Virus record (IMG/VR): IMGVR_UViG_3300012988_000001
Span: 1 to 64,000 of that record
Strand: one strand, 5' to 3'
Length of the DNA: 64,000 nt
The position numbers and the translations under genes were made by a program. Below, in pieces: positions 1,133-17,585 of this stretch. Under the pieces are notes generated by a model, which did not search any database, was not told where the DNA came from, and worked only from the letters and a program-made list of their open reading frames with translations. Every line of letters begins with the position of its first letter. The stretch's first letter is position 1.

Positions 1133-1307
1133 AGTACTTGACGGATGATCGCAGTACTGGCATAATGTATCACATAGAGCGGCGGGACAGGTTAACTTCC
1201 CTAAGTAGACAGCCAGTAAGTCAGACGAAAATCTGGTGTCGCACTGAAAGAAAGATTGAAAAGAGTTTTAAAAAGTACTTGACAAGCTGGTGGGAAATTG
1301 AGATAAT
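1133..1307 (+). promoter_or_regulatory. Tandem sigma70-type promoters upstream of gene 1358
   Basis: TTGACG(1138) N17 CATAAT(1161) and TTGACA(1279) N17 GATAAT(1302); the second has a Chi site in its spacer. Confidence 0.8.
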
Positions 1308-1357
1308 GACCCCGTAGACAGCAAACAACCTAACTAAACCTTAAGAGGAAATATACA

Positions 1358-1954
1358 ATGACTACTACTAACAACGCAACCGAAGCACGTGTAACCCTGA
1401 AATCTGCTCTTGAAGCTGGCGACGTAAAAGGCTTGGGTGCAATCCTCGCTAAAATCGGTGGCGATAAAGACGGCGTATCAAAATTGGGCTTGACTTTCTC
1501 CCTCGCAGTAACGGCGGCGAAAGATGTACTCAAAGATCAGGCTAAACAGGCCGCCCTTAACGCAGAAGCCGCAGCGAAACGCCGCGAAGATAAAAAGGCA
1601 GCACGTCAGGCAGAGATCGAAGCACAGAACGCAGAGATCAAGGCAGAGAAAGAAAACATGATCAAGTTCCTCATGGACACCGTGAACGGCCTCGGCCTTG
1701 ACCTTGAAGCGGCAGAAGTAGCAGCACAGGCAGCCGTTGACAAAAAATACGGCGTAAGCGAAAAGGCTAAAAAGTACACCTTTACCCGCGTGGCAGTGGT
1801 TGTAGACGGTAAAGAATACGATATGCCAACGTCCGGTAACATGGTTCAAGTGCTTAAAGATGCCATGACCAAAGGCGGCTACGCAACACACAAAGACTTC
1901 ATTCTTGCACACGCTAAAAACGCAGAAGAAGCCGCAGCAGCTTTCGCTGAATAA
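1358..1954 (+). CDS. Ala/Lys-rich coiled-coil protein, probably highly expressed
   Basis: GAGGA RBS, two promoters, own terminator, AAA/GCA/GGC-biased codons. Confidence 0.85.
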   Translation: MTTTNNATEARVTLKSALEAGDVKGLGAILAKIGGDKDGVSKLGLTFSLAVTAAKDVLKDQAKQAALNAEAAAKRREDKKAARQAEIEAQNAEIKAEKENMIKFLMDTVNGLGLDLEAAEVAAQAAVDKKYGVSEKAKKYTFTRVAVVVDGKEYDMPTSGNMVQVLKDAMTKGGYATHKDFILAHAKNAEEAAAAFAE

Positions 1955-1971
1955 GTCAAGTAATTAAAACT

Positions 1972-2000
1972 AAAAGCCTCGCATAATGTGGGGCTTTTTT
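1972..2000 (+). terminator. Intrinsic terminator
   Basis: AAAAGCCTCGCA-TAA-TGTGGGGCTTTTTT. Confidence 0.8.
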
Positions 2001-2020
2001 TATTATAAAAGATTGTAGAA

Positions 2021-2100
2021 AGTACTTGCAATACTTTTCTAGTACTGTATAATGGTTTGCATAGGGGGAAACAACTTCCCCACTAATTAAGGAAAGAATC
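2021..2100 (+). repeat. Promoter-stem-loop-RBS cassette, copy 2
   Basis: AGTACTTGCAA...AGTACTGTATAAT, GGGGGAA/TTCCCC hairpin, TAAGGA. Confidence 0.85.
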
Positions 2101-2466
2101 ATGACACCTTTACAACTGATGGCTGACTCTTATATCACGGCGATGCATTGGGCTAGTACTGATGAAAATGGTGATCCACTCGACAACTACCCTACAGCAG
2201 CAGAGGCAAAAGATATTGCGGCAACTACCTGCAATAACTTCCTGAAAGTCCACGGTGATGATCTATCAATCGTAATGGGGTTACATCCTCATTATGGTTA
2301 TGAGCAAGCGGGGCATGATTTGTTTTTGACTCGCGAAGGTCATGGGGCTGGTTTCTGGGATCGTGATCTTGGTCACTATGGGGACGTGTTTACAAAGTAC
2401 TGTCAATCTATTGGTACGGCTGATCCGTATGTGGGCGATGATGGTTTTGTTTACGTTAATGTTTAA
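2101..2466 (+). CDS. Conserved phage protein (GHDxxLTRxGHGAGFWDR motif)
   Basis: AGHDLFLTREGHGAGFWDRD motif, recalled from phage hypothetical proteins; function unknown. Confidence 0.75.
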   Translation: MTPLQLMADSYITAMHWASTDENGDPLDNYPTAAEAKDIAATTCNNFLKVHGDDLSIVMGLHPHYGYEQAGHDLFLTREGHGAGFWDRDLGHYGDVFTKYCQSIGTADPYVGDDGFVYVNV

Positions 2467-2467
2467 A

Positions 2468-2548
2468 AGTACTTGCATTACTTCTTAAGTACTGTATAAT
2501 GATTTGCATAGGGGGAAACATCTTCCCCCATTAATTAAGGAAATGAAA
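2468..2548 (+). repeat. Promoter-stem-loop-RBS cassette, copy 3
   Basis: Same consensus as copy 2. Confidence 0.85.
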
Positions 2549-2767
2549 ATGGATCTGAATATCAAGATCAACCTCACAGTGAAACAAGTCAATGGTGATG
2601 AAGTTCTCCCACACCACGTAGACGGCCTGCGAGAAAATGCCATTGCTTATATTCTGGAAATGGTTAGCGATGATTGCCGTGAAGGGGAATTTAATGAAGT
2701 AATGGAAAACATCTGTGATGATGAAGAAACAGAATATCGCGGGTACTGGTCGGTTGTAGAGGAATAA
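2549..2767 (+). CDS. Acidic hypothetical protein; paralogue of 11064..11303
   Basis: Shared EVLxHH..L.E.A...I..M...GE...Y.G.WSV pattern; start moved to the RBS-supported ATG. Confidence 0.75.
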   Translation: MDLNIKINLTVKQVNGDEVLPHHVDGLRENAIAYILEMVSDDCREGEFNEVMENICDDEETEYRGYWSVVEE

Positions 2768-2769
2768 TC

Positions 2770-3030
2770 GTGGCTGTCGGATTTGCTAAAGACGGGGCAG
2801 AACAAAACGAGATTATAGCGGTCGTGGAGGCCGCTGTAAGCCACGCAAGGAATCAGCTAGGGGATAACACTACCCCATCGCTTACGCATTGCCTAGACTG
2901 TTCTAAGGCCATTCCTGAGCGTAGGCGTGAAGCTGTTAAGGGTTGCAAATATTGTATTGATTGTCAAGCTGAGTATGATACAATATTCAAACGCAATCCA
3001 CGTAACTGCTGGCACAGGAGTATGAGATGA
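2770..3030 (+). CDS. DksA/TraR-family C4 zinc-finger protein (YbiI-like)
   Basis: CLDCSKAIPERRREAVKGCKYCIDCQ; N-terminus MAVGFAKD resembles YbiI. Confidence 0.9.
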   Translation: MAVGFAKDGAEQNEIIAVVEAAVSHARNQLGDNTTPSLTHCLDCSKAIPERRREAVKGCKYCIDCQAEYDTIFKRNPRNCWHRSMR

Positions 3031-3124
3031 TCTTTAAGTATAACATGGGTTGCTGTTCGCGTCAAGGGTTTTATGCAGTATATTCTGACGGGGTAAACTA
3101 TCGTTATCGGTTTGTCAAGTACTT

Positions 3125-3246
3125 TATGTAGGGGAGAGATCCCCTGTTTATTTGTACAGTACTAAATCATAAGGACGGACTGCTGCACCCTGTGGGCCTG
3201 TTTTTGTCTATGCGTGTATTATGCCAGTACTCCACCAGCTTGTCAA
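3125..3246 (-). ncRNA. CCCACAGGGTGC element, copy B
   Basis: TTGACA(3241-3246) N17 CATAAT(3218-3223); core 3184-3196; hairpin 3131-3144. Confidence 0.6.
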
Positions 3247-3339
3247 CATCTTTTTTTCTGAATATTATTTGAAGAAAGTACTTGCATTACTTTTGCAGTA
3301 CTGTATAATACTTACATCAACCACAGAGAGGAAAGCAAA

Positions 3340-3561
3340 ATGACTAAGTACCTGATGGAAGTTTTTACTACTGAAAACGTAGCAACCAATGTAAAGCGTT
3401 ATTACAAGGTTGTTTGTGGTGTAGGCCGCAGAATCAGTAAGGCAGACTATCAGAAGCTGGAAGATAACGCGGAGGGGGCTTGCTGCTTTAGTACTGTAAA
3501 CACGAAAACCCATATTAAGCAATACAAAACTTTAGAGTTCTATACTGATTTAGTTTTGTAA
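3340..3561 (+). CDS. Hypothetical early protein
   Basis: Own promoter (3282-3309) and GAGGA RBS. Confidence 0.8.
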   Translation: MTKYLMEVFTTENVATNVKRYYKVVCGVGRRISKADYQKLEDNAEGACCFSTVNTKTHIKQYKTLEFYTDLVL

Positions 3562-3562
3562 A

Positions 3563-3642
3563 AGTACTTGCATTACTTCTTAAGTACTGTATAATGATTT
3601 GCATAGGGGGAACAACTTCCCCCACTAATTAAGGAAACGAAA
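3563..3642 (+). repeat. Promoter-stem-loop-RBS cassette, copy 4
   Basis: Promoter nearly identical to copy 3. Confidence 0.85.
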
Positions 3643-3867
3643 ATGGCACTTATCAAGATTATCGAATCAAACGTAGCAGGTCAAGAAAGCACTTTCATTG
3701 AATATGATACTGATTCGTTTGACGAACGTTATGCGGTGCAATACGGTGGATCTGGTATCACGTTCAATGGCACAAAGGAAGGTTGGAAATGTGCGGTTGA
3801 AGATTATTTGTCAAACGTTAAACACCAATTAGAAAGTGCCGCACAAGAAGGTGGCTACCTCGCATAA
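3643..3867 (+). CDS. Hypothetical early protein
   Basis: ORF behind cassette. Confidence 0.8.
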   Translation: MALIKIIESNVAGQESTFIEYDTDSFDERYAVQYGGSGITFNGTKEGWKCAVEDYLSNVKHQLESAAQEGGYLA

Positions 3868-3948
3868 AGTTTTACTCCAGTACTTGACATACTAATCGAG
3901 TACTGGCATAATGACTTTATCGAAACGAAACACTATTAAGGAATTATC

Positions 3949-4242
3949 ATGGCTAAGTATTGCAGAGAGTGCGGCGGGTTGTGTGTAGTAGATGATTTTG
4001 GTGTATCGAATCATATCTATGAAAACGGTGATATTCACCACGTGCTGGATGGTGATCATGTGGCTATCCCTGAGATGGAAGAAACATTGATCAATGAGGA
4101 AGTTTTCGACTTCTGCAAAGATCATTATGAATGTTTCAACGCATACCCTACTGAGTGCGAATTGTCAAACGGTGATGTTTATTCTTTTGCCGAAATGATG
4201 AAAGTACTTTCAGAGGAACAAAAGCAAGAAATTGAAAAATAG
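3949..4242 (+). CDS. Hypothetical protein with N-terminal CxxC
   Basis: CRECGG; own promoter TTGACA(3884) N17 CATAAT. Confidence 0.8.
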   Translation: MAKYCRECGGLCVVDDFGVSNHIYENGDIHHVLDGDHVAIPEMEETLINEEVFDFCKDHYECFNAYPTECELSNGDVYSFAEMMKVLSEEQKQEIEK

Positions 4243-4323
4243 TACTTGCATTACTTTCTGATTACTGTATAATGTTTTGCATAGGGGGAAACATCTTCCC
4301 CCATTAATTAAGAGAATAATATC
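4241..4323 (+). repeat. Promoter-stem-loop-RBS cassette, copy 5
   Basis: Consensus cassette. Confidence 0.85.
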
Positions 4324-4704
4324 ATGGCTAACCAAATCACTCCAGCACAGATCTTTAACAAGTACGAAATTCAGATTGTACTGGTAGAGTATGTTCCATC
4401 CTATGGATGGTCTGACGCTTGCGTAGCCGAAGATGTAGCCGATGCAAAGCGTATCATTAAAGAGTATGCCGCAGAAGGTATCAGCCTGAAAAGTGTTCGC
4501 CGCTGGGTGCTTAACAAAGATGCGTTTCTCTGTCAAGCCCTGTTGAACTTCTGCCGTGACTACTATCGCCGTACTGGTGGACTTTGGCCTAATGAGGTTG
4601 AAGTACTGAAAGCTAACGGGGTGAAGAAATTCACCTTGACTTTGAAAGAAATCGAAGAAGTACTGGGTAATGATTGCCGTTTAGTTACTTCTCAGGCAGT
4701 ATAA
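4324..4704 (+). CDS. Hypothetical early protein
   Basis: ORF behind cassette. Confidence 0.8.
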   Translation: MANQITPAQIFNKYEIQIVLVEYVPSYGWSDACVAEDVADAKRIIKEYAAEGISLKSVRRWVLNKDAFLCQALLNFCRDYYRRTGGLWPNEVEVLKANGVKKFTLTLKEIEEVLGNDCRLVTSQAV

Positions 4705-4769
4705 AAAGTACTTGACACTATACGGGGATATGATATTATATCCCCATCTTAAGCAAAGAAGGTAATACA

Positions 4770-4961
4770 ATGTCTAGAATCTCAAACGCCGCCTTAGATG
4801 CTTTCGCACTGAAAGTAATGGCTGTTAGTACTAACAAGTCATGGGGTACTGATCAGTTTAAACGTCTGGTAATTTGTGCGGGTAACGGCATGACTGTAGA
4901 AGAAACCGCCAAAGAAATCGATGCAATGACTATTGACAAAGATCAGGATAATGGACTATAA
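4770..4961 (+). CDS. Hypothetical early protein
   Basis: Own promoter (TTGACA at 4712) and GAAGG RBS. Confidence 0.75.
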   Translation: MSRISNAALDAFALKVMAVSTNKSWGTDQFKRLVICAGNGMTVEETAKEIDAMTIDKDQDNGL

Positions 4962-5142
4962 TAAGGTTAACAAGCGAGTACTGGAGTTATCAAGGAAAGC
5001 ACGTAAAGAGTACACCTTAGATCGTTCAATTAGCAACTATCATTTAATGCAAGGTGATAAGTTTATTGTTATTGACGAACCGCTGGAAGTAGTGTATATT
5101 GTAGTTAATGCGATGATTCGCGACAAAACGAGGATTAAGTAA
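4933..5142 (+). CDS. Hypothetical protein
   Basis: Overlapping operon ORF. Confidence 0.6.
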   Translation: MTKIRIMDYNKVNKRVLELSRKARKEYTLDRSISNYHLMQGDKFIVIDEPLEVVYIVVNAMIRDKTRIK

Positions 5143-5390
5143 TGCGTACTATCTTTGACCTGCAAGACAAAGGAACTATGGCACGTAGATCAATGGTTAC
5201 TGTAGGCGGGAAACAACACTGGAGCGGTTATGTATGCTTCATTGTTGGCGGGAAAATGTATGAGCGGGTAGTATACCACAAAGAGCTTAATTACATTCTT
5301 TTCCGTAAAGAAGTGATCGCTATCGAACCAGAAGCCCTCAAACCGATTGCAGGGGCTTGGAATAAAGAATCGCTGAATGTATCAGCTTAG
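5142..5390 (+). CDS. Hypothetical protein
   Basis: TAATG coupling; hairpin at 5399-5417 follows. Confidence 0.7.
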   Translation: MRTIFDLQDKGTMARRSMVTVGGKQHWSGYVCFIVGGKMYERVVYHKELNYILFRKEVIAIEPEALKPIAGAWNKESLNVSA

Positions 5391-5440
5391 TTAATTAAAG
5401 GCCGCACAGAGCGGCCTATCGCTCATATGGGGGTATTATA

Positions 5441-5584
5441 ATGAATCCACGCAACATATTAATCAAACCACCAGCAACAAAGGCAGAACGGGCAGAACGC
5501 CGACGCAACCGCATGAAGTCACTTGTAAAGGCTGGCTATTCACGTTCACACGCTTTCAAACTTGCAAAGGAAGAAATAAAATGA
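5441..5584 (+). CDS. Small basic protein (47 aa, not in ORF track)
   Basis: GGGGG RBS; hand translation MNPRNILIKPPATKAERAERRRNRMK... Confidence 0.55.
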   Translation: MNPRNILIKPPATKAERAERRRNRMKSLVKAGYSRSHAFKLAKEEIK

Positions 5585-5704
5585 AACTTTGTCAAGTACT
5601 GGACGAGATTGAAAATATTGTTGACAGAAAACAACAATATGATACACTGTTATCAAGAAGTCAGGCAAATGAAGTTGAAAGGCAACGGATAGAAGGGGCA
5701 GAAT

Positions 5705-6007
5705 GTGAATCGTTATACGCAACCGCAGCACAGGGGAATAAGTACAGCAGCACAACGTCGCAAGCCAGCAAAGACTAAACACAGAAAGTACTTAAGAGAA
5801 CCCGTTCCCGTAGATACTAGCTGGCTGATGGATTATGACGTACAGCATATGTATTTGAATGGGGGATGGTCATTTGGTAACGGTATGATCTGGGGTAGTA
5901 CTGGCAGTGGTAAGAGTAATATCGGTGCAATGTATTTTAGTAAATTGAATGGCTGGACTTCTGCCGCCCCGAAAAAAGATTTTGAATCCCCGTTCAAAAA
6001 GGCTTGA
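5705..6007 (+). CDS. Hypothetical protein
   Basis: GTG start; start uncertain; overlaps ORF 5581..5778. Confidence 0.4.
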   Translation: MNRYTQPQHRGISTAAQRRKPAKTKHRKYLREPVPVDTSWLMDYDVQHMYLNGGWSFGNGMIWGSTGSGKSNIGAMYFSKLNGWTSAAPKKDFESPFKKA

Positions 6008-6072
6008 CACAATACCGGCTTAGTGAGATAATACTTACAAGCCGGAACAAAGGCACATACCCACAGGGTGCG
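6004..6072 (+). ncRNA. CCCACAGGGTGC element, copy C
   Basis: TTGACA(6004) N17 GATAAT(6027); core 6060-6071; converges on copy D. Confidence 0.55.
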
Positions 6073-6109
6073 GAAAAGTATTCAGTACTTGAGAATGATA
6101 ATCATTTAC

Positions 6110-6188
6110 ATCAACAGACGGATTCCTGCACCCTGTGGGCTAGTTGTTTTCATGGCTTTATCATGCCAGTACTGGATAGGTTTGTCAA
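6110..6188 (-). ncRNA. CCCACAGGGTGC element, copy D
   Basis: TTGACA(6183-6188) N17 CATGAT; core 6127-6139 followed by TCCGTCTG. Confidence 0.55.
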
Positions 6189-6220
6189 CTACTTTTTAAT
6201 GAAAAGAATTTGAAAATAAT

Positions 6221-6298
6221 GCTTGCAGTACTTTTAAATTAGCGTATAATGTTTTGCATAGGGAGAGATAATCTTTCCCACTAATTAAGGAAATGAAA
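6221..6298 (+). repeat. Promoter-stem-loop-RBS cassette, copy 6
   Basis: TTGCAG..TATAAT; hairpin variant GGGAGA/TTTCCC. Confidence 0.8.
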
Positions 6299-6664
6299 AT
6301 GGAACGTATCGTTTATGGTCGTGGTGCAAGTGCTGAAGTTGTTCCTGTAGAACTGCTGGCGATGTTAACCGAAATGATTCGCCGTAGTGATATTAGTTTT
6401 CCTCCGTCCGTAATGCCGTATGCTATCAGCTACGAAGTACGCAAGACTCCTAAGTACTGGAAGATTGACCGTGTAGAACTGGATAAAGATACAGGAGAAA
6501 TCCGTCAATATGGGCGTAGCTCTGCTGGTGCTGTAGACTTTGACGGAAACGTGTTTAAGTCTGCTAGTTATAACGCGGTGGCTAAAGGTATTCGCGGGAA
6601 TATCTTTGTTAATAACGGATTTAATGCAATTACTGGTGATGGTTATATCCGTTATTTAAATTAA
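6299..6664 (+). CDS. Conserved phage protein (GNVFKSASYNAVAKGIRGNI motif)
   Basis: Motif resembles a widespread phage hypothetical family (G.v.K.AS..A.AK..R.N); function unknown. Confidence 0.75.
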   Translation: MERIVYGRGASAEVVPVELLAMLTEMIRRSDISFPPSVMPYAISYEVRKTPKYWKIDRVELDKDTGEIRQYGRSSAGAVDFDGNVFKSASYNAVAKGIRGNIFVNNGFNAITGDGYIRYLN

Positions 6665-6667
6665 GAA

Positions 6668-6750
6668 AGTACTTGCAAAGTAATCAAAACAGCGTATAAT
6701 GTTTTGCATAGGGGGAGATAAACTCCCCCACTATTAAGAGAAGAAATATC
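6668..6750 (+). repeat. Promoter-stem-loop-RBS cassette, copy 7
   Basis: Consensus cassette. Confidence 0.85.
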
Positions 6751-6990
6751 ATGGCACAGAAAATCACTCGCACCGAAGTTAATCATTATCTGGCAGTACT
6801 GAATGGTGTATTGGCAGCGATGGGTGCAAAGTATCGTTATAAATTGCAACCTGTTGCTGGTGGTTATACACTGGAGAAGTACAATACAGAGGGCGATCTG
6901 GTCGATACTTGTATTGGTGGTCAATCTTTACGTGCAGTATATGAGATCATTCGTTTTTCTGCAAACATGATCGGGGATAACGTGAAGTAA
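6751..6990 (+). CDS. Hypothetical early protein
   Basis: ORF behind cassette. Confidence 0.8.
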   Translation: MAQKITRTEVNHYLAVLNGVLAAMGAKYRYKLQPVAGGYTLEKYNTEGDLVDTCIGGQSLRAVYEIIRFSANMIGDNVK

Positions 6991-7038
6991 TTATTATCAA
7001 AAGTACTCTTGACAATACTTTGAGAGTACTTTATAATA
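6987..7038 (+). repeat. 52-bp promoter block identical to 10981-11032
   Basis: GTAATTATTATCAAAAGTACTCTTGACAATACTTTGAGAGTACTTTATAATA occurs at both sites. Confidence 0.85.
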
Positions 7039-7069
7039 CTTACATCACTTAAGCAAAGAGAGAAACAAA

Positions 7070-7378
7070 ATGGAAAAGACTAAACTGTTCGTAGCTCAGA
7101 TTACCCTGCGTCATGGCGAATATGAAACGCAAGTTCGAAAACTGATCCTTGCGAAGTCGCAAATTGAAGCCGAACTGTTCGCCCGTAGCAATGAAGGAAT
7201 GGCGATCTATGACGGCTCATGCATCGAAGATGGTAACAGCTATCAGGAAGAAGGTCAACCAAATACATGGTACTTCTGCGGCGGGGATTGGTGCGTTACT
7301 CTGGGCGTGATCTGGGAGATGGAAGATCGCGAAATGGCGAAACAAGTAATTGCTAGCGGCTTAGTATCTTTCTTGTAA
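7070..7378 (+). CDS. Hypothetical early protein
   Basis: Own promoter and RBS. Confidence 0.8.
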   Translation: MEKTKLFVAQITLRHGEYETQVRKLILAKSQIEAELFARSNEGMAIYDGSCIEDGNSYQEEGQPNTWYFCGGDWCVTLGVIWEMEDREMAKQVIASGLVSFL

Positions 7379-7390
7379 TTACTTTCAAAA

Positions 7391-7474
7391 AGTACTTGCA
7401 TTACTTTCTGATTACTGTATAATGTTTTACATAGAGAGGGGAAACGGTTCCCCTCCTAAATTAAGGAAAGTCCC
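7391..7474 (+). repeat. Promoter-stem-loop-RBS cassette, copy 8
   Basis: Hairpin variant GAGGGGAA-acgg-TTCCCCTC. Confidence 0.85.
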
Positions 7475-8696: not shown

Positions 8697-8697
8697 A

Positions 8698-10759: not shown

Positions 10760-10984
10760 ATGTCTCTGTACTCATTAGATATTCAAACACCAGATTTCAT
10801 CACTAAAATAATTGTATCATCGGAACAGCGAGAATTAGATGATGCAAAGGCTGAAGTTCTGGAATGGGCGAAAGGTTTTTATCCTGCTGGTACTAACTTA
10901 CAGGTAAAATGGATCTCGCACGAAACGAAAATTGATTTACATTATTTTGTATCAGGTGGTTATTCCGCTATTAAAATTCTGTAA
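10760..10984 (+). CDS. Hypothetical early protein
   Basis: Own promoter and RBS. Confidence 0.75.
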   Translation: MSLYSLDIQTPDFITKIIVSSEQRELDDAKAEVLEWAKGFYPAGTNLQVKWISHETKIDLHYFVSGGYSAIKIL

Positions 10985-11063
10985 TTATTATCAAAAGTAC
11001 TCTTGACAATACTTTGAGAGTACTTTATAATAATCACATCACTTAAGCAAAGAGGCAAGACAA

Positions 11064-11303
11064 ATGGAAAGAGTACTGAAAATCTCCTACAACTGGACTA
11101 ACAACGACAACGAAAGTGGTGAAGTTCTGGAGCATCATAAAGAGTACTTAGAAGAAAGTGCTTTTGACCGGATCGGTTATATGATGAAACAGGGCTACAC
11201 AAGCGGGGAATTGTCTGATAACATTCATTCGCAGGAAGATCCCGCAGATCATGAAGGTACTAGTTATAGTGGCTGGTGGTCTGTAAGTAAAGAGGATTCG
11301 TAA
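11064..11303 (+). CDS. Acidic hypothetical protein; paralogue of 2549..2767
   Basis: EVLEHHKEYLEESAFDRIGYM...GEL...YSGWWSV. Confidence 0.8.
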   Translation: MERVLKISYNWTNNDNESGEVLEHHKEYLEESAFDRIGYMMKQGYTSGELSDNIHSQEDPADHEGTSYSGWWSVSKEDS

Positions 11304-11453
11304 ATGAAAAAAGAATTCATTCTACGCGTACAAATGAAATCAGGGGGAACCCGCACATTTCGCGAATGGGGATGGTCGGCGGGTGATGCATACCAGACTT
11401 TAAAAAAGAATAACCCCGATGTACAGTACAAGATAGAAGGAAAGGCGGCGTAA
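11304..11453 (+). CDS. Small hypothetical protein (49 aa)
   Basis: TAAATG junction; hand translation MKKEFILRVQMKSGG... Confidence 0.55.
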   Translation: MKKEFILRVQMKSGGTRTFREWGWSAGDAYQTLKKNNPDVQYKIEGKAA

Positions 11454-11546
11454 TTATTATCAAAAGTACTTGTATTACTGGAGCGAGTACTTTATAATAC
11501 TTACATCAACTAAGCAATAACGCTTAATTAAACCGAGGACAGGAAA

Positions 11547-11684
11547 ATGAAAGAATCTCAATACGAAGCAGTACTGGCACAGACTGGTGAAGACCTGACG
11601 CCTGAGCAGTACGCGAAAATTGAGGAACTGCTGCTGGCTGGTAAGTCGGTTAAAGACACTGTGAAAGCCGTCCGTAAAATGTAA
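11547..11684 (+). CDS. Small hypothetical protein (45 aa)
   Basis: Own promoter (~11465-11497), AGGA RBS. Confidence 0.6.
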   Translation: MKESQYEAVLAQTGEDLTPEQYAKIEELLLAGKSVKDTVKAVRKM

Positions 11685-11892
11685 TAAAGGGGCGTACAAT
11701 GATTAAACCAATAGATCCTATTGTACGCCTTTATTACAACACGTACAAACCATCAGATCTCAAAAGGCTGGTGGAGGAAAGAAAAGAAGTACAAAAAGAT
11801 TTAAAAAGTACTTGCAATAAAATCGATATCAAAGTATAATGTTTACATCAGCTAGGGAATGGTCCACTAGCTAACTAACAGGAAATAAAATC

Positions 11893-12258
11893 ATGGCTAT
11901 CATCTCCGCTTTCTTCTCTTCTCGTAAACTGGCTCGTGATGCTAAAGTTGATCTGGGTGGTAAGATTGTTGATAATGGTACAACCGCACCAGCGGGACAG
12001 CGTTGGGAACTCCAGTACGAAGCAGCCCCGAAATCAGCAGCCATCGCAGAACTGGCGGCGATCATGGAAGCTGAAGTAGTGGACATGAAACTTGAAGAGG
12101 TTAAACCTCGTGATCTGATGGGCTTGCCACGCCCTGTAAGTAAACACCAAACGGCTCGCGAATATGTACTCAAGGATCGCAAAAACAATCCGGTACGCGT
12201 ACAGGTTCGCCGCAGTAAAACCAATGCCCTGTTAGCCGCTCACATGGCGAAAGCATAA
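11893..12258 (+). CDS. Hypothetical early protein
   Basis: Own promoter TTGCAA N17 TATAAT, AGGA RBS, host-like codons. Confidence 0.85.
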   Translation: MAIISAFFSSRKLARDAKVDLGGKIVDNGTTAPAGQRWELQYEAAPKSAAIAELAAIMEAEVVDMKLEEVKPRDLMGLPRPVSKHQTAREYVLKDRKNNPVRVQVRRSKTNALLAAHMAKA

Positions 12259-12304
12259 CCGAACATGGGGGAGAACTTTCTCCCCCTCTTTTAAGAGAAA
12301 GAAC

Positions 12305-12556
12305 ATGAAAAAGAAAGTACAGTTAGTTAACGGTAGTTTCATGCGATTGCATTATAAACCCATTCAAAGAGTCATTGATCGAGGTGTAGAAGTAGCTAAT
12401 AAGTATGTACTAGGAGAGATCCGACCTCGCAAACTTAATAACGGAAAGTTTGAAGTACTGGAAGTTTCACGCACAGAACGTATTGTAATTGACAAAGACA
12501 AAAACATCCACTTTCTGAGCCACGAAAAGTACAATGATTTCATCGAAAAATATTGA
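12305..12556 (+). CDS. Hypothetical protein
   Basis: Preceded by a promoterless hairpin-RBS half-cassette (GGGGGAGAA/TTCTCCCCC). Confidence 0.75.
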   Translation: MKKKVQLVNGSFMRLHYKPIQRVIDRGVEVANKYVLGEIRPRKLNNGKFEVLEVSRTERIVIDKDKNIHFLSHEKYNDFIEKY

Positions 12557-12563
12557 TAAAAAA

Positions 12564-12645
12564 GGGTTGACTTCGGTTGGCCCTTTTGCTATTATATACG
12601 CATAGAAACAAACTAGCCCACAGGGTGCATAAATACGTCTATAAT
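12564..12645 (+). promoter_or_regulatory. Terminator/promoter hybrid plus CCCACAGGGTGC element, copy G (leader of gene 12666)
   Basis: TTGACT(12567) N17 TATTAT(12590); core 12617-12629. Confidence 0.65.
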
Positions 12646-12665
12646 TTACCGAAAGGAGAAACCAT

Positions 12666-13202
12666 ATGCCCGGACAATTCCGATCAAAAGCAGGTGCTAC
12701 GCTCGCAGGTCATAGCGACAAGTGGAGCGACGAGAACCGCAGAACAAACAGCCACAACGCAGGACAGGGTTCACGAGGTTCCCGCAACCAAGGCACTGGT
12801 GCACAAGGCAAAGCAAACACCGTAGCATCACAAGGTATCGACACATCCAGAATGAAACCAGAAGAGAAGCTACGCTATTTTAATTCTCTTGGATTACTTG
12901 GGAACAAACCAGAACCAGAAATCGAAGTAGAGCCACCAAAACACCACCAGCAAGCACCAGTAGACAGCAAGACACTAATCAGTAACCTACGCGAACAATG
13001 GTCCGAGATCTTCGGAGAGAACGCAGGACTGATGAAAGGCATCATTAACACAATGAAGCAAGTCCCACCAGCTAAGTTTAAGAAAGCAGCACAGGCAGCA
13101 TATAGAGCCACCGCAGAGATCACAGCAAAGACTGATGATATCTATGATATACAAGAATACATCCAGAACGCAATCAATGAGATTGCCTATCAAGATCTAT
13201 AA
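12666..13202 (+). CDS. Hypothetical protein with disordered G/N/Q-rich N-terminus; T-poor coding strand
   Basis: AGGAG RBS; only 2-6 T per 60 nt in several lines. Confidence 0.8.
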   Translation: MPGQFRSKAGATLAGHSDKWSDENRRTNSHNAGQGSRGSRNQGTGAQGKANTVASQGIDTSRMKPEEKLRYFNSLGLLGNKPEPEIEVEPPKHHQQAPVDSKTLISNLREQWSEIFGENAGLMKGIINTMKQVPPAKFKKAAQAAYRATAEITAKTDDIYDIQEYIQNAINEIAYQDL

Positions 13203-13269
13203 AAAATAAAGGGTTGACTTCGGTTAGCCCTTTTGTTATTCTATCAGTACAACAACAGAGGACAACACA

Positions 13270-13551
13270 ATGAAACATATACTCACCATTCTCGCAGTAC
13301 TGGCATCATTCAACGCAGCAGCCACGACACCACCGCATGAAGTTAGATGTACGTCCTCCGGTATTCCTAGCATCATTGTATTAGCTGATGGTGTACTGAT
13401 GGATGATATGGAGCGTCTTATTGCAACAGAGATTCACACTGGAATCTTTGAATCTATTGACGAATACGGCAAAGTAACATATACTATTCATGGTAACAAT
13501 ATTATCATGAAAGGAAACGGATTCACTAAAGAGTATGTCTGTGATCTATAA
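13270..13551 (+). CDS. Putative exported protein
   Basis: Signal-peptide-like MKHILTILAVLASFNAAA. Confidence 0.7.
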   Translation: MKHILTILAVLASFNAAATTPPHEVRCTSSGIPSIIVLADGVLMDDMERLIATEIHTGIFESIDEYGKVTYTIHGNNIIMKGNGFTKEYVCDL

Positions 13552-13726
13552 AATTGTACTCAAAGGCTTAATGCCCGGTAGCGAAGTCTGGGAACAGCAC
13601 ACAGCATTCATCTCATCACAACCCGGTGATGACATAGATGGCATGATACTTGCACACATCTATGAATGGCGTAGCAAAGCAGGATACTACAAAGTGAAAT
13701 ATATGTCAAAAGAGGTAATCCAATGA
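13535..13726 (+). CDS. Hypothetical protein
   Basis: Operon ORF. Confidence 0.55.
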   Translation: MSVIYKIVLKGLMPGSEVWEQHTAFISSQPGDDIDGMILAHIYEWRSKAGYYKVKYMSKEVIQ

Positions 13727-13751
13727 GATAACTTTACAGAGGATTATCTTA

Positions 13752-13967
13752 ATGCCAACTCATTCTATTATTTTAAATGGTAAACGTTTCAAGATGACTG
13801 AGGGAGTTTTACAAAGTACTAACACACAATTGATCCTTGACAAATTGACTAAGGATGAATGTGATGCTATACTACGTGAAGCAAATAAAATTAAATCCAC
13901 CGTAGCAGCACATCCGGTCAAACGTCAACTGTTACAGGGAATTATTATGGGGTGTTTGCGTAAATGA
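13752..13967 (+). CDS. Hypothetical protein
   Basis: GAGGA RBS. Confidence 0.65.
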   Translation: MPTHSIILNGKRFKMTEGVLQSTNTQLILDKLTKDECDAILREANKIKSTVAAHPVKRQLLQGIIMGCLRK

Positions 13968-14142
13968 TTTATCAAGAGATTGTCAAGCGATTAAAAGAGC
14001 TTGACTTTGGTAATGCAATACGTTATGCTAGTGCAAATGCATTCGAACTGCAAGCACTGCACGATCAAGGTCATAGCATTGAGTCGCTGGTGGAGATCTG
14101 TTTAAACCATAAATAACCTTGTAACCTTACAAGGAGTATAAC

Positions 14143-14412
14143 ATGGTTAAAACAGATTTAAACACGGTCCAATCATGGCACAAAGTCCAGTTAGACCAAC
14201 TGCCCCAACTTTTAAAAGATCAAGGGTTCCAATATGTAAAAGCATTCAGTACTGATGAACATAGAATCTTTGTATCACAGGATGGTAACTACAAATTGAT
14301 TATACATAAAAACGTAGGGAAACTATATCCTACTAAAAATAATCAGTGCTTGCACACATTTGCAATTGTTGCACCAATGCCAAAATTAAATGACGTTAAA
14401 AGGGTTGACTAA
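14143..14412 (+). CDS. Hypothetical protein
   Basis: AAGGAG RBS. Confidence 0.75.
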   Translation: MVKTDLNTVQSWHKVQLDQLPQLLKDQGFQYVKAFSTDEHRIFVSQDGNYKLIIHKNVGKLYPTKNNQCLHTFAIVAPMPKLNDVKRVD

Positions 14413-14461
14413 GGTCGGCCCTTTTGCTATTATAACTACATCGAAACGAAGGAGTTAAATC

Positions 14462-15052
14462 ATGTACGTCACTAAAGCAGCCAAAGCACATCTTAAAGCA
14501 CTGGACCTGTTACCTACTAATAACCAAATGCTTAAGTACTGTAGAGAGAATCTTACTCGTTTGGGTAAAGGTTCTAGTCGTGAAGTGTTTGCACTCTCCG
14601 ATACGCTGGTGGTCAAGGTGGCACTGGGCGGCGTAGGTGTGAAGCAGAACGAGAATGAGATCCGAGTGTGGAATCTCGTCAGCTATGACTACATCGGAAT
14701 GAAACGTTCCTTTGCTAAAGTACTGGTAAATGAAGGACACTGGAAGGACTTCTATATTGTAATGGAACGTCTGGAAACTAACACAGTGTCACGCAGCATC
14801 TTTAATACTAAAACAGTGCAGCAATGGCGTACTGATCGCAAAGCAATGCATCCTACTGCCAAGCGTATTTTTAAAGATGTACAAGACACCGACGACAACG
14901 CGTTTACCAATAACATTGCAGACATTACGCCTCGCAATATGGGAACATCAAAATCAGGTGTTGTCAAGATGCTTGACTATGGTTTTAGTACTCCCATATG
15001 GAATGGTATCGCGAAAGGCAAACTAAAAAATCGCGAATTACTTATTCGTTAG
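14462..15052 (+). CDS. Protein-kinase-like (Ser/Thr kinase fold) protein
   Basis: LGKGSSREVF Gly loop, VVKVA Lys, NENE Glu, VMERL hinge, DITPRNMG catalytic loop, LDYG (DFG-like). Confidence 0.75.
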   Translation: MYVTKAAKAHLKALDLLPTNNQMLKYCRENLTRLGKGSSREVFALSDTLVVKVALGGVGVKQNENEIRVWNLVSYDYIGMKRSFAKVLVNEGHWKDFYIVMERLETNTVSRSIFNTKTVQQWRTDRKAMHPTAKRIFKDVQDTDDNAFTNNIADITPRNMGTSKSGVVKMLDYGFSTPIWNGIAKGKLKNRELLIR

Positions 15053-15113
15053 TACTTGACAGATAATAGCTGGTGGGATATAATTATCCCATCAACTACA
15101 GAGGAAAGCAATC

Positions 15114-15335
15114 ATGGGATTCAAAGTTCGCCAGTGGTCAACAACAAACGCTCGCCCATTCGATGTAGTGTACGAAGACCACGCACTAAACAACGTACAC
15201 TATCAGCCAAACGTAGAGTTTAGTACTCCAGAACTGGCAGAGCATCACATGCAATCACTGGTTAAAAACTTCACAGATGATAGTCTATCATTCATTCGTG
15301 ATCACTGGCCTACCGATGGTGCAGTAACAGAATAA
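15114..15335 (+). CDS. Hypothetical early protein
   Basis: Own promoter with a Chi site in the spacer; GAGGA RBS. Confidence 0.75.
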   Translation: MGFKVRQWSTTNARPFDVVYEDHALNNVHYQPNVEFSTPELAEHHMQSLVKNFTDDSLSFIRDHWPTDGAVTE

Positions 15336-15661
15336 CAAAAGAAAGGGTTGACTTCGGTCGGCCCTTTTGTTATTATATCAGTACATCCAAAGGGGGACAT
15401 ATGAAATATATTTTGATGGTAGGTATGATGATTTTATATCAACGCCAAACAGCATTCCCATTGCTGGGAATTATTGCAATTCTTACTGGTTTATTGATTT
15501 GGAGATGGTAACATGGCTAAGGTCACGATTGAAACAGTAAAAGAAACCATTAAGTTAATGGATGAATTGAACGGCACGGATCATTATAATACTATTGATT
15601 GGGATAATCCCAGTACTGAATTACCTGCTTTCTTAACTGATAAGAAAGATGATAAAAAGGA

Positions 15662-15760
15662 TTGACACATAACTGCCAATGAGATATTATATAGTCATTG
15701 GCAGATAAGCTACTAACCCACAGGGTGCAGTAGTCCGTCTATAGTTTGAGTACTTACAAT
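15662..15760 (+). ncRNA. CCCACAGGGTGC element, copy H
   Basis: TTGACA(15662) N17 TATTAT(15685); core 15717-15729 then TCCGTCTATAG. Confidence 0.6.
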
Positions 15761-16153
15761 ATTGTAAATGATCTTGACCGCCGAGGCAATTTGATCAATA
15801 ATTGATCAAGAAATTTTAGAGTACTGGATTATGGTTGAAATTATGAAACAATATGGTAATGTATTACTGAAAACGGAGAACGACTATTATGTAGTAAGAT
15901 CGGGCCGCGAAAGTATTCAAACACAAAACGCTTTCCATGCTCTGGTATGGTATGCAAAATTTATCATGAAGGAAAACAAATGAGAATACCTGCTCTTATC
16001 CTTCTAGTACTCGTCGTGCTGTATGTAGCTAATGCTATACAGGATGAAAGCAGTATTCAGTACTGGAATGAAATGAAATATTATTGGAATAAGTCTTGAC
16101 ATAGCTGGTGGACTATCCTATAATATATACATCTTAACAAAGAGGATTACCAA

Positions 16154-16333
16154 ATGGTACACGTAGATCTGGAAGTACAAAAGAAAGTCTGGTACGATAT
16201 CGGCCTGAAAGGTATTAACTGGTCTGACGCTCAATACGCTGCACTCAAAGCACTTGACCGTTATCAACGTGAACAAGTACTTGAGGCACACAAGAAAGGT
16301 GTGAATGACCGCATCGATCTTGAAGTACTGTAA
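16154..16333 (+). CDS. Small hypothetical protein (59 aa)
   Basis: Own promoter with Chi in the spacer, GAGGA RBS, terminator at 16341-16378. Confidence 0.7.
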   Translation: MVHVDLEVQKKVWYDIGLKGINWSDAQYAALKALDRYQREQVLEAHKKGVNDRIDLEVL

Positions 16334-16450
16334 ATCCTAAAAGGCCAATAACACATTGGCCTTTTTTTCGTTTATACACTAAATCAATTACGATTTCAAG
16401 AAATTTTAGAAAGTACTTTAAATCGAAAATAGTTTATATAAATTTCAGAA

Positions 16451-16536
16451 AGTACTTGCAATCAATATTAGAAAGCGTATAATGTATTACATCGAGAGGG
16501 GAAATGGTTCTACTCTCAAACGTTAAGGAAATGATT
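16451..16536 (+). repeat. Promoter-stem-loop-RBS cassette, copy 12
   Basis: GAGAGGGGAA..TTCTACTCTC variant. Confidence 0.8.
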
Positions 16537-17067
16537 ATGTACTCTTCAGTTCAAACTATGGTTAACGTCAACGCTGCTACTGGTATCGCTTATGGTTACA
16601 TCAACGCTAACAATGTAAACGGTGATGTACTGCATGATATCTTCTGCAATGGCATCGATTCACGCAGATTAGAATGTGATATCGAGTTTGCTTCAAAACA
16701 TGGTTTCGTTACTCCTGAGCAGGAAGAGAATGAATTATTCAGTACTTACCTCGCTCGCATTCAAGATGTAATGCTTGACTTCCTTAACAATCTGCAAGAT
16801 GAGGAAGGTAATGATCTCACAGAACTGGTGGAAGAACATGATCGCCAGTACGAAGAGTTTACAGGTGATATCCACGTAGCAACAATCGATGACACTACTG
16901 TTATCTATAACACTGACAGTAATACTATCTGCGTGATGGATAGCAAAACTGTAGGGAAGTACTTCTTATGCTCCCCTTGCTGCCCTAACGCTGGTGATTT
17001 GGATAGTGCTGGTGGCGATGTAGAAACTTACGATGTACCAGCTAGCTGGCGTGAAATGGACTACTAA
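16537..17067 (+). CDS. Acidic conserved phage protein (C-terminal CSPCCPNAGDLD)
   Basis: ORF behind cassette. Confidence 0.8.
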   Translation: MYSSVQTMVNVNAATGIAYGYINANNVNGDVLHDIFCNGIDSRRLECDIEFASKHGFVTPEQEENELFSTYLARIQDVMLDFLNNLQDEEGNDLTELVEEHDRQYEEFTGDIHVATIDDTTVIYNTDSNTICVMDSKTVGKYFLCSPCCPNAGDLDSAGGDVETYDVPASWREMDY

Positions 17068-17103
17068 TATAGCGAATGAGCGATGATATGTCAAGTCTAA
17101 AAA

Positions 17104-17186
17104 AGTACTTGCAATCATCGCTCAGTACTGTATAATGATTTGCATAGGGAGAGAATAGTTTTCTCCCAATAGTAAGGAATACTGTT
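17104..17186 (+). repeat. Promoter-stem-loop-RBS cassette, copy 13
   Basis: GGGAGAGAA-tagtt-TTCTCCC variant. Confidence 0.85.
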
Positions 17187-17471
17187 ATGTTTAACGGTCA
17201 TATTGCAAACTTCGCATTACGTCGCGGTGTAGAGATTCAAGTAGTCGAAGCAAATGAAATCGACAATGAATACAATGAATTGTGGTTCTACGCCGCAGAC
17301 AATGACTGTGAGCCAGAAATGATGTACATCCAAAACAATGATGGTACTTTATCATTCAAAGGTAAGTTAAACAAATCACTTGAAGATCTGCCAGCGTGGA
17401 TCGATAGCAAAGATAAACTGAAAAAAGTTATCTGCTATCTGTCAGATATGCTCGCTGCCGAAGCAATGTAA
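17187..17471 (+). CDS. Hypothetical early protein
   Basis: ORF behind cassette. Confidence 0.8.
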   Translation: MFNGHIANFALRRGVEIQVVEANEIDNEYNELWFYAADNDCEPEMMYIQNNDGTLSFKGKLNKSLEDLPAWIDSKDKLKKVICYLSDMLAAEAM

Positions 17472-17483
17472 TCTTTACAAAAC

Positions 17484-17585
17484 AGTACTGGACATAACAA
17501 GCCAGTACTGTTAATATGTAGTCATTGGCAGATAAGCCGTAGCCCACAGGGTGCAGAGATCCGTCTATAGCTTTTAAGTACTAAT
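17484..17585 (+). ncRNA. CCCACAGGGTGC element, copy I
   Basis: TGGACA(17489) N17 TAATAT; core 17543-17555 then TCCGTCTATAG. Confidence 0.55.

What the first reader, a model, noticed from the sequence alone, without database searches (positions are those of the whole stretch)
1133..17510. Early promoters carry paired AGTACT sites exactly 20 bp apart (operator-like)
Seen: one AGTACT overlaps the first T of the -35 and a second ends just before the -10. Examples are 1133/1153, 2021/2041, 2468/2488, 3277/3297, 3563/3583, 3879/3899, 10100/10120, 17104/17124 and 17484/17504. The 20-bp spacing holds whether the -35/-10 spacer is 16 (TTGCAW class) or 17 nt (TTGACN class), so it is constrained independently. 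At 7001 and 10995 the pair forms a 10-bp inverted repeat (AAAGTACTCT/AGAGTACTTT). Inference: two sites about two helical turns apart for a phage regulator or methylation switch that coordinately controls about 30 early promoters.
Basis: partly seen in the sequence, partly recalled or inferred. Interest (0 to 1): 0.6.

Follow-up and report, generated by a model that had tools for sequence, protein, structure and literature searches.

The report
Signature AGTACT palindrome of RaK2-like phages
The paired AGTACT sites at the early promoters are real, but they are a special case: this 6-base palindrome is the most over-represented hexamer in the 366-kb jumbo phage genome and in all nine relatives counted, so an unidentified factor probably reads it.

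Summary
All nine AGTACT pairs lie exactly 20 bp apart at the stated coordinates, where about 0.5 is expected. One copy overlaps the first T of the -35 hexamer and the other ends 1-2 nt before the -10 hexamer.

The window is the left 64 kb of a RaK2-like jumbo phage, and its first ~18.5 kb lie in the long terminal repeat that carries the early genes. AGTACT occurs 211 times in the window (18 expected) and 910 times in the genome (121 expected), the top hexamer of all. About 90% of copies lie inside ORFs, 3.6-fold above a synonymous-codon shuffle. Sites are twice as conserved as neighbouring hexamers. Flank preferences are strand-symmetric.

Nine related phages show the same enrichment. The more distant PA5oct, Atu_ph07 and XacN1 do not. 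These genomes have zero copies of at least 23 other palindromic hexamers.

Across the clade the pair spacing is 20-23 bp, because each site is anchored to its own promoter element.

Best reading: AGTACT is the site of an unidentified symmetric reader specific to this clade, and at early promoters it acts as an operator. No reader or cognate methyltransferase was found. I found no published description.

The parts
1..64000 (.). Genome-wide layer: 211 AGTACT copies in the window (18 expected). Most lie inside ORFs, in all three frames.
1..18510 (+). Part of the long direct terminal repeat (early-gene region). It holds 98 AGTACT copies, 37 of them outside ORFs. The right edge is placed by homology to the fENko-Kae01 repeat end (19,736).
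1133..1158 (+). Paired sites, 20 bp. -35 TTGACG, 17-nt spacer, -10 CATAAT; the downstream site ends 2 nt before the -10.
2021..2046 (+). Paired sites, 20 bp. -35 TTGCAA, 16-nt spacer, -10 TATAAT.
2468..2493 (+). Paired sites, 20 bp. -35 TTGCAT, 16-nt spacer, -10 TATAAT, followed by the G5/C5 5'-UTR hairpin cassette.
3277..3302 (+). Paired sites, 20 bp. -35 TTGCAT, 16-nt spacer, -10 TATAAT.
3563..3588 (+). Paired sites, 20 bp. -35 TTGCAT, 16-nt spacer, -10 TATAAT, plus hairpin cassette.
3879..3904 (+). Paired sites, 20 bp. -35 TTGACA, 17-nt spacer, -10 CATAAT. The orthologous fENko promoter keeps both hexamers with a diverged spacer.
7002..7030 (+). Paired sites, 23 bp, inside a 10-bp inverted repeat. 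-35 TTGACA, 17-nt spacer, -10 TATAAT; the downstream site ends 1 nt before the -10.
10100..10125 (+). Paired sites, 20 bp. -35 TTGCAT, 16-nt spacer, -10 TATAAT.
10996..11024 (+). Paired sites, 23 bp, inside a 10-bp inverted repeat; a copy of the 7002 promoter.
11465..11491 (+). Paired sites, 21 bp. -35 TTGTAT, 17-nt spacer, -10 TATAAT.
17104..17129 (+). Paired sites, 20 bp. -35 TTGCAA, 16-nt spacer, -10 TATAAT.
17484..17509 (+). Paired sites, 20 bp, on a weak promoter-like sequence in front of a small non-coding conserved unit.
299..304 (+). Promoter with the upstream site only (AGTACT overlapping TTGCAT).
1274..1279 (+). Promoter with the upstream site only; a Chi octamer lies in its spacer.
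4707..4712 (+). Promoter with the upstream site only.
6668..6673 (+). Promoter with the upstream site only.
8032..8037 (+). Promoter with the upstream site only; a further AGTACT lies 24 bp upstream at 8008.
11807..11812 (+). Promoter with the upstream site only.
15051..15056 (+). Promoter with the upstream site only; Chi in its spacer.
16451..16456 (+). Promoter with the upstream site only.
17608..17613 (+). Promoter with the upstream site only.
42014..42550 (+). The only DNA methyltransferase detected (phage Dam family PF05869). It is clade-specific and its specificity is unknown. Listed as a candidate, not as a shown part.

Best explanation
AGTACT is the recognition word of an unidentified, two-fold-symmetric reader shared by the RaK2-like jumbo phages.

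The word is kept at about one copy per 300-450 bp along the whole genome by selection acting on the DNA itself. This makes phage DNA about 29 times richer in it than E. coli K-12 DNA.

In the ~21-kb terminal repeat that carries the early genes, the same word is built into about 27 strong sigma-70-type promoters at fixed registers. One copy overlaps the first T of the -35 hexamer. In 12-13 promoters a second copy ends 1-2 nt before the -10 hexamer.

The 20-bp spacing is a consequence of promoter geometry (16-nt spacer), not a separate constraint.

Shown: enrichment, selection, symmetry, clade distribution, promoter register.
For: - Enrichment: 211 copies against 18 expected in the window. 910 against 121 in the genome, the top hexamer of all.
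- A bare hexamer: flanks carry at most 0.1 bit per position. The weak flank preferences (C favoured and G disfavoured at -1; T at -3/-4) mirror each other on the two sides and recur in four genomes, although 86% of genes are on one strand. This points to symmetric recognition of duplex DNA, not RNA.
- Inside ORFs: 699 observed against 192 +/- 11 after synonymous-codon shuffling and 129 +/- 13 after codon-order shuffling. The ratio is uniform (3.1-5.5) along the genome and on both gene strands.
- Conservation: sites are 55% conserved against fENko-Kae01, versus 26-27% for flank-matched expectation and neighbouring hexamers. Early-region sites reach 79%.
- Clade distribution: enriched in Munch, fENko-Kae01, CBB, Hallingskeid, EJP2, XaC1, UB, RaK2 and GAP32. 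Depleted or absent in PA5oct, Atu_ph07 and XacN1.
- Promoter register and clade-wide two-site promoters. In this genome the downstream site never occurs without the upstream one.
- Genome end: the densest AGTACT cluster of the genome sits at the inferred physical left end in this genome, fENko and CBB.
- Host contrast: E. coli K-12 has 400 copies in 4.64 Mb.
Against: - No reader was found. There is no ScaI-type endonuclease or N4/N6 or C5 methyltransferase family hit.
- Pfam or PHROGs scans of 33 of the 103 clade-specific ORFs, plus 3 other early-region ORFs, gave no recognisable sequence-specific DNA-binding domain.
- The HTH regulator annotated in CBB is not conserved here.
- A sharp 6-bp word with almost no flank information is more typical of restriction-modification enzymes than of transcription factors.
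- Repression is inferred from position only. No transcription data exist for this phage.
- Why a promoter operator should also be needed about 800 times inside genes is unexplained.
Confidence: 0.45

Rival explanations
1. AGTACT is the target of a phage DNA modification (methylation or another base change). The mark labels phage DNA as self or protects it. At early promoters the fully modified incoming DNA and the newly replicated DNA differ in promoter activity, giving a methylation clock.
For: - A sharp 6-bp palindrome with near-zero flank information is the classic signature of type II modification enzymes.
- A clade-specific Dam-family methyltransferase exists at window 42014-42550, translationally coupled to a clade-specific ORF of unknown function.
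- A genome that has purged at least 23 other palindromic hexamers could tolerate about 900 ScaI-type sites more easily if they were modified.
- RaK2 DNA is reported to be methylated (PMC3622015).
- HIP1 in cyanobacteria is a precedent for a hyper-abundant palindrome (PMC5861425). Its link to a methyltransferase is from my own knowledge.
Against: - Modification alone does not explain why the number of targets should be raised 7-11 fold.
- This genome has no PF01555 or PF00145 enzyme. Dam-family enzymes characterised so far act on GATC (my knowledge).
- GGTACC and CGTACG are purged (0 and 1 copies), so GTAC is not generally protected.
Confidence: 0.2
2. AGTACT is a Chi-like self tag that restrains a nuclease (the phage's own host-DNA-degrading or recombination nuclease, or a host one). 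The tag is densest at the DNA ends, where exonucleases enter.
For: - Copies are evenly dispersed irrespective of genes (interval CV 0.86-0.95, fewer close pairs than Poisson).
- The density contrast with host DNA is 29-fold.
- The densest cluster lies at the physical genome end.
- E. coli Chi itself is about 17-fold enriched and concentrated in the same terminal repeat.
Against: - Known Chi words are asymmetric and are read on single strands.
- This model gives no reason for the exact registers at -35 and -10, which are conserved across the clade.
- The extra density in the repeat is mostly intergenic and promoter-linked. The density inside ORFs there is like that elsewhere.
Confidence: 0.15
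3. The promoter copies are intrinsic promoter elements contacted by RNA polymerase itself (host holoenzyme or the clade-specific phage sigma-70-family factor). The genome-wide enrichment has a separate cause.
For: - Each site is anchored to its own promoter hexamer rather than to the other site.
- In the 17-nt-spacer promoters the last T of the downstream site supplies the T of a TGn extended -10.
- A sigma-70-family gene is clade-specific (own genome 325,777-326,745).
Against: - The same palindromic word at two different promoter positions, and 800 times in ORFs, is not what RNA polymerase contacts predict.
- AGTACT at -19..-14 does not match the extended -10 in the 16-nt-spacer class.
- Half of the strong early promoters lack it entirely.
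Confidence: 0.1
4. There is no function. The pairs hitch-hike on a duplicated promoter cassette, and the genome-wide excess comes from mutation bias or biased gene conversion.
For: - Class-A promoters are clearly paralogous cassettes.
- Natural variants break and rejoin at these cassettes.
Against: - One-mismatch neighbours are not depleted.
- Sites are conserved two-fold above their neighbours.
- Hexamers stay intact while spacers diverge.
- The excess survives synonymous-codon shuffling.
- The trait is stable across nine phages and absent in outgroups.
Confidence: 0.05

Closest known systems
HIP1 (GCGATCGC), the highly iterated palindrome of cyanobacteria (PMC5861425)
   Same: A short palindrome that is hyper-abundant genome-wide, sits inside ORFs beyond what codon usage predicts, is conserved by selection, and has an unknown reader and function.
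   Different: AGTACT is 6 bp rather than 8 bp. It occurs in a virus clade rather than in cells. The excess is 7-11 fold, not 15-300 fold. It is additionally placed at fixed promoter registers and at the genome end. No cognate methyltransferase was identified.
Chi (GCTGGTGG) and other over-represented self words (DUS/USS, KOPS)
   Same: An over-represented, dispersed word that distinguishes own DNA from foreign DNA. It is enriched near the ends of this genome, alongside genuine Chi.
   Different: AGTACT is palindromic, so it has no orientation. It is also integrated into promoters.
Abundant phage DNA-binding proteins that coat the genome and repress early promoters: SPO1 TF1 and phi29 p6 (from my own knowledge)
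   Same: The concept of one phage protein with many genomic sites whose preferred sites overlap early promoters and shut them off.
   Different: Those proteins read hmU-DNA or bendability, not a discrete hexamer. No homologue was found here.
Classical paired operators (lambda, 434, LexA boxes)
   Same: Palindromic sites overlapping -35 and -10, about two helical turns apart.
   Different: Operators are 14-20 bp long and occur a few times per genome. AGTACT is 6 bp and occurs 910 times.
P1 pac site hexamer clusters (TGATCA/G, Dam-regulated; from my own knowledge)
   Same: A cluster of a palindromic hexamer at the place where packaging ends are made.
   Different: The P1 hexamer is not enriched genome-wide. 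A role in cleavage here is untested.
T4-type promoter-early stem-loop (PeSL) cassettes (from my own knowledge)
   Same: Repeated early sigma-70 promoter plus hairpin units between small early genes, used as recombination points.
   Different: T4 PeSLs carry no AGTACT pair.

Membership tests
Repressor operator pair | Palindromic sites overlapping RNA polymerase contact regions of the regulated promoters | tested here: met
   Offsets are -5 from the -35 start and -7/-8 from the -10 start.
Repressor operator pair | Sites confined to the regulated promoters | tested here: not met
   910 copies, about 90% inside ORFs.
Repressor operator pair | Cognate DNA-binding regulator encoded nearby or in the genome | tested here: inconclusive
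   No DNA-binding domain was found in 36 ORFs scanned, 33 of them from the 103 clade-specific ORFs. The CBB HTH gene is absent here.
Repressor operator pair | Binding lowers transcription | not testable with these tools
   No RNA data for this phage.
HIP1-like hyper-abundant palindrome | Short palindrome many-fold over-represented genome-wide | tested here: met
   7.5-11.5 fold; the top hexamer in four genomes.
HIP1-like hyper-abundant palindrome | Excess inside ORFs beyond codon and amino-acid usage | tested here: met
   699 against 192 (synonymous shuffle) and 129 (codon-order shuffle).
HIP1-like hyper-abundant palindrome | Positional conservation above background | tested here: met
   55% against 26-27%.
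HIP1-like hyper-abundant palindrome | Cognate methyltransferase | tested here: inconclusive
   Only a Dam-family enzyme of unknown specificity.
Chi-like nuclease-control word | Over-represented and dispersed; enriched towards DNA ends | tested here: met
Chi-like nuclease-control word | Asymmetric word with orientation bias | tested here: not met
   The word and its flanks are symmetric.
SlmA-binding site (GTGAGTACTCAC) | GT-N-AGTACT-N-AC context | tested here: not met
   2-4 of 910-1356 sites per genome; G at -1 is disfavoured.
ScaI-type restriction-modification target | ScaI endonuclease family or N4-cytosine methyltransferase encoded | tested here: not met
   PF09569 and PF01555 give no match in the genome.
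ScaI-type restriction-modification target | Discrete 6-bp palindrome without flank information | tested here: met
T4-type PeSL promoter cassettes | Repeated early promoter plus stem-loop units that serve as recombination joints | tested here: met
   Cassettes. Joints and loose ends at cassette positions in contigs of natural variants: (contig-level evidence only).

The most novel reading that the evidence does not exclude
RaK2-like jumbo phages carry a genome-wide cis-element system. A clade-specific reader recognises the hexamer AGTACT as a 'this is phage DNA' tag, helped by a 29-fold density contrast with the host. The same reader-word pair is used for three jobs: shutting off the early promoters of the terminal repeat, marking or protecting the genome end, and acting along the whole chromosome (protection, compaction or repair). 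This would be a viral counterpart of Chi or HIP1, with an identifiable reader.
Probability: 0.3. Interest if true: 0.85.

Novelty: new variant of a known kind. Interest (0 to 1): 0.72.

Why it matters
Phage genomes normally purge short palindromes, and this clade does so to an extreme: at least 23 palindromic hexamers have zero copies. One palindrome kept at 7-11 times expectation, under measurable selection, in every member of a widespread group of 350-kb phages implies an unrecognised reader and function.

The system is directly testable. ScaI digestion and a methylome of virion DNA would test modification.

It could explain three things: how these unmodified, AT-rich giant genomes tell self from host, how their roughly 50 terminal-repeat early genes are switched off, and how genome ends are handled.

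It also gives a simple sequence marker for the clade, and a class of early promoters that published annotations of these phages missed.

Tried and rejected
- SlmA sites: the SlmA consensus contains AGTACT, but the flanks do not fit.
- ScaI-like restriction-modification: no endonuclease and no N4/N6 or C5 methyltransferase family hit in the genome.
- Very-short-patch-type conversion: one-mismatch neighbours are not depleted.
- Dispersed repeat or codon-usage artefact: flanks carry no information, and the excess survives synonymous shuffling.
- RNA-level motif: flank preferences are strand-symmetric, and the promoter copies lie upstream of the start site.
- First terminal-repeat gene (window 1358-1954) as an H-NS-like reader. 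The model has mean pLDDT 73. The C-terminal hairpin-helix resembles the H-NS C-terminal domain only weakly (2l93, TM 0.45, E 1.2). There is no Pfam, PDB-sequence or Atlas support. Kept as a weak lead only.
- Pfam and PHROGs scans of 33 of the 103 clade-specific ORFs, plus 3 other early-region ORFs, gave no DNA-binding candidate.
- Public runs hold the phage only as contigs. No raw reads and no RNA were available, so methylation, transcript starts and physical ends could not be read. The list of differences was truncated, so I drew no substitution statistics from it.
- Literature: no paper in the library links AGTACT or these promoter strings to these phages. The CBB promoter tables do not list this promoter class.
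- No tRNA and no Rfam family in the window.

Full report
**What the window is**

The window is the first 64 kb of a single 366,160-bp viral contig. Its nearest relatives in the phage collection are Klebsiella phage fENko-Kae01 and Salmonella phages SE_PL, 7t3 and Munch, at about 77-80% identity. The major capsid protein is 99% identical to that of 7t3. It therefore belongs to the RaK2-like group of ~350-kb T4-superfamily jumbo phages.

fENko-Kae01 has a 19,736-bp direct terminal repeat (DTR) holding 50 small genes (PMC11218385). CBB has a repeat of 22,456 bp (PMC5259590). By homology, the repeat of this phage runs from about genome position 363,733 across the assembly junction to about window position 18,510. 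A motif conserved at the repeat start in fENko and CBB, CCCCTTCCGCTA|TATC, marks the left boundary. The finding's interval (1133-17510) therefore lies inside the early-gene terminal repeat.

- All nine 20-bp pairs are present at the stated coordinates. They are the only such pairs in the genome.
- Shuffles of the window give none. Even with 98 sites in 18.5 kb, only about 0.5 pairs are expected at one given distance.
- I picked sigma-70-like promoters without reference to AGTACT. The upstream site starts 5 nt before the -35 hexamer in 25 cases, so its last T is the first T of TTG. The downstream site starts 7 nt (10 cases) or 8 nt (2 cases) before the -10 hexamer.
- Of 63 promoter-like sites in the early region, 27 carry the upstream site and 12 carry both. 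None carries only the downstream site. In the rest of the genome 2 of 180 promoter-like matches carry a site.
- The two 10-bp inverted repeats are real, but their hexamers are 23 bp apart. A further pair at 11465 is 21 bp apart.

AGTACT is not a promoter word.

- It occurs 211 times in the window against 18 expected.
- It occurs 910 times in the genome against 121 expected, the highest observed/expected ratio of all 4096 hexamers.
- About 90% of copies lie inside ORFs, in all three frames.
- Positions outside the hexamer carry at most 0.1 bit each, so this is a bare 6-bp palindrome and not part of a dispersed repeat.
- Shuffling synonymous codons within each gene, which keeps the protein and the codon usage, leaves 192 +/- 11 copies against 699 observed. 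Shuffling codon order leaves 129.
- The excess is uniform along the genome and on both gene strands.
- In the genome body, copies are spread slightly more evenly than random and show no preference for gene starts or ends.

**Selection on individual sites**

- Against fENko-Kae01 (78% identity), 55% of aligned sites are intact. The flank-matched expectation is 26%, and neighbouring random hexamers are intact 27% of the time.
- Early-region sites are 79% intact.
- One-mismatch neighbours are not depleted, so a conversion-type repair bias is unlikely.
- The weak flank preferences are mirror-symmetric and reproducible in four genomes, although most genes share one strand. This points to two-fold-symmetric recognition of duplex DNA.

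**The trait defines a clade**

Each count below is AGTACT, followed in parentheses by the control word (the pattern read backwards).

| Phage | AGTACT | Control |
|---|---|---|
| Munch | 850 | 149 |
| fENko-Kae01 | 941 | 150 |
| CBB | 1235 | 187 |
| Hallingskeid | 1313 | 200 |
| EJP2 | 1312 | 159 |
| XaC1 | 1356 | 130 |
| UB | 905 | 135 |
| RaK2 | 937 | 142 |
| GAP32 | 1011 | 169 |
| PA5oct (outgroup) | 15 | 40 |
| Atu_ph07 (outgroup) | 25 | 82 |
| XacN1 (outgroup) | 0 | 127 |

The background makes this more striking. In the four RaK2-like genomes I assembled, at least 23 of the 64 palindromic hexamers have zero copies, which is extreme restriction-site avoidance. E. coli K-12 has one AGTACT per 11.6 kb and the phage has one per 0.4 kb.

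**Promoter architecture across the clade**

- The same two-site early promoters occur in fENko, CBB and XaC1. They also occur in RaK2, GAP32 and uncultured ~350-kb viral contigs.
- The modal pair spacing is 20 bp here, 18-21 in fENko, 21-22 in CBB and 21 in XaC1.
- In CBB the downstream site is always 7 nt before the -10, while its distance from the -35 is 15 or 16. Each hexamer is therefore anchored to its own promoter element. The 20-bp figure follows from the 16-nt spacer that is common here.
- In orthologous promoters (window 1133 against fENko 3558; window 3879 against fENko 5346) both hexamers are intact while about 40% of the bases between them differ.

**A third context**

The densest AGTACT cluster of the genome (8-10 copies in 500 bp) sits at the inferred left physical end in this phage, fENko and CBB. 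It lies next to Chi octamers.

**Mechanism**

The simplest single explanation is one symmetric reader of AGTACT. It would explain a discrete symmetric word, site-level selection, clade specificity, fixed registers overlapping the -35 and the region just upstream of the -10, and a cluster at the genome end.

- At the promoters, a bound reader would compete with RNA polymerase and shut off that promoter class. This step is inferred from position.
- The genome-wide copies suggest a second role. Possibilities are a self tag, protection, compaction or repair. That role is unknown.
The genome has no ScaI-type endonuclease and no N4/N6 or C5 methyltransferase family hit, only a clade-specific Dam-family enzyme.
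- There are 103 ORFs shared by the RaK2-like genomes and absent from PA5oct and XacN1. I scanned 33 of them, plus 3 other early-region ORFs, and found no DNA-binding domain.

Leads only:
- Two terminal-repeat proteins (12666-13199 and 14143-14409) belong to families annotated as virion proteins.
- The first repeat gene (1358-1954) has a weakly H-NS-like C-terminal fold.
- A sigma-70-family gene is clade-specific.

The rival explanations (modification target, Chi-like nuclease control, intrinsic promoter element, neutral hitch-hiking) are weighed in their own sections.

**Novelty**

Searches of the paper library found nothing linking AGTACT, or these promoter strings, to these phages. The RaK2, CBB, fENko-Kae01, PA5oct and Sharanji papers do not mention it. 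CBB's published promoter tables omit this promoter class. The closest described phenomenon is HIP1 of cyanobacteria, whose function is also unknown.

**Limits**

- Gene calls are my own crude longest-ORF calls.
- Public runs hold the phage only as contigs, so I have no methylation, transcript or end data.

Noticed in passing
whole genome; window 1066, 1286, 6856, 10055, 11272, 11767, 14086, 14605, 15069, 16104, 17008, 18128: The E. coli Chi octamer GCTGGTGG is about 17-fold enriched: 36 copies on the + strand and 21 on the - strand, against about 3.4 expected in total. It is concentrated in the terminal repeat, mostly in one orientation, and several copies lie inside promoter spacers. It is also enriched in fENko, CBB and XaC1. 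This suggests protection of the ends against RecBCD.
   Followed up: partly
whole genome and relatives: Extreme palindrome avoidance. At least 23 of the 64 palindromic hexamers (for example AAGCTT, CTGCAG, GGATCC, GGTACC) have zero copies in four RaK2-like genomes.
   Followed up: partly
window 7908-7943, 12560-12595, 14398-14433, 15341-15376: Composite terminator-promoter elements. A hairpin with a TTCG loop contains the -35 TTGACT and is followed by TATTAT. This second early promoter class carries no AGTACT.
   Followed up: partly
window 2055-2100, 2505-2545, 3600-3640; joints at 2031, 2067, 2543, 3868: Class-A promoters come as cassettes with a G5/C5 5'-UTR hairpin and a ribosome-binding site. 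Contigs of natural variants break and rejoin exactly at these cassettes, which indicates gene-cassette shuffling as in T4 PeSLs.
   Followed up: partly
window ~850-960 (-), ~3140-3250 (-), 17484-17600 (+): Three copies of a conserved small non-coding unit, each with its own promoter (two also next to a terminator-like hairpin). There is no ORF, no tRNA and no Rfam match. It is possibly a phage small-RNA family.
   Followed up: partly
genome 363,700-364,350 (outside the window): The inferred physical left end. It has the conserved CCCCTTCCGCTA|TATC junction shared with fENko and CBB, followed by non-coding DNA with the densest AGTACT cluster and repeated AAAGTACTCCATCCTAAATC-like units.
   Followed up: partly
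window 12666-13199 and 14143-14409: Terminal-repeat (early-region) ORFs fall in PHROG families annotated 'virion structural protein'. The fENko record marks three proteins in its repeat, of similar size and position, as detected by LC-MS/MS; I did not align them to these ORFs. They may be DNA-associated proteins that are packaged.
   Followed up: no
window 1358-1954: The first conserved gene of the repeat lies behind two tandem strong promoters. It encodes a long coiled coil plus a C-terminal hairpin-helix domain with an invariant SGN loop. Its fold is weakly like the H-NS DNA-binding domain, and the match is not significant.
   Followed up: partly
window 12305-12553; 14462-15049: A ParE-like toxin domain (E = 3e-7), and a weak protein-kinase-like match in an ORF in a position similar to the fENko gene annotated 'putative protein kinase'. 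Both are among the early genes.
   Followed up: no
window 18572-31500: An HNH_3/NUMOD4 endonuclease ORF lies just past the repeat edge. It is followed by about 20 tandem ORFs of 150-240 aa, which may be paralogues. The eight I sampled have no Pfam match except the first. AGTACT density is low here, with no copy between 18372 and 22274.
   Followed up: partly
window 41469-42550: The Dam-family methyltransferase gene overlaps the stop codon of a clade-specific 182-aa ORF of unknown function, so the two are likely translationally coupled.
   Followed up: no
CBB 10171-10208 (L026): Two AGTACT copies 18 bp apart form the stem of a hairpin that the CBB authors list as a terminator. Because the word is self-complementary, close pairs can double as RNA or DNA hairpins.
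   Followed up: no
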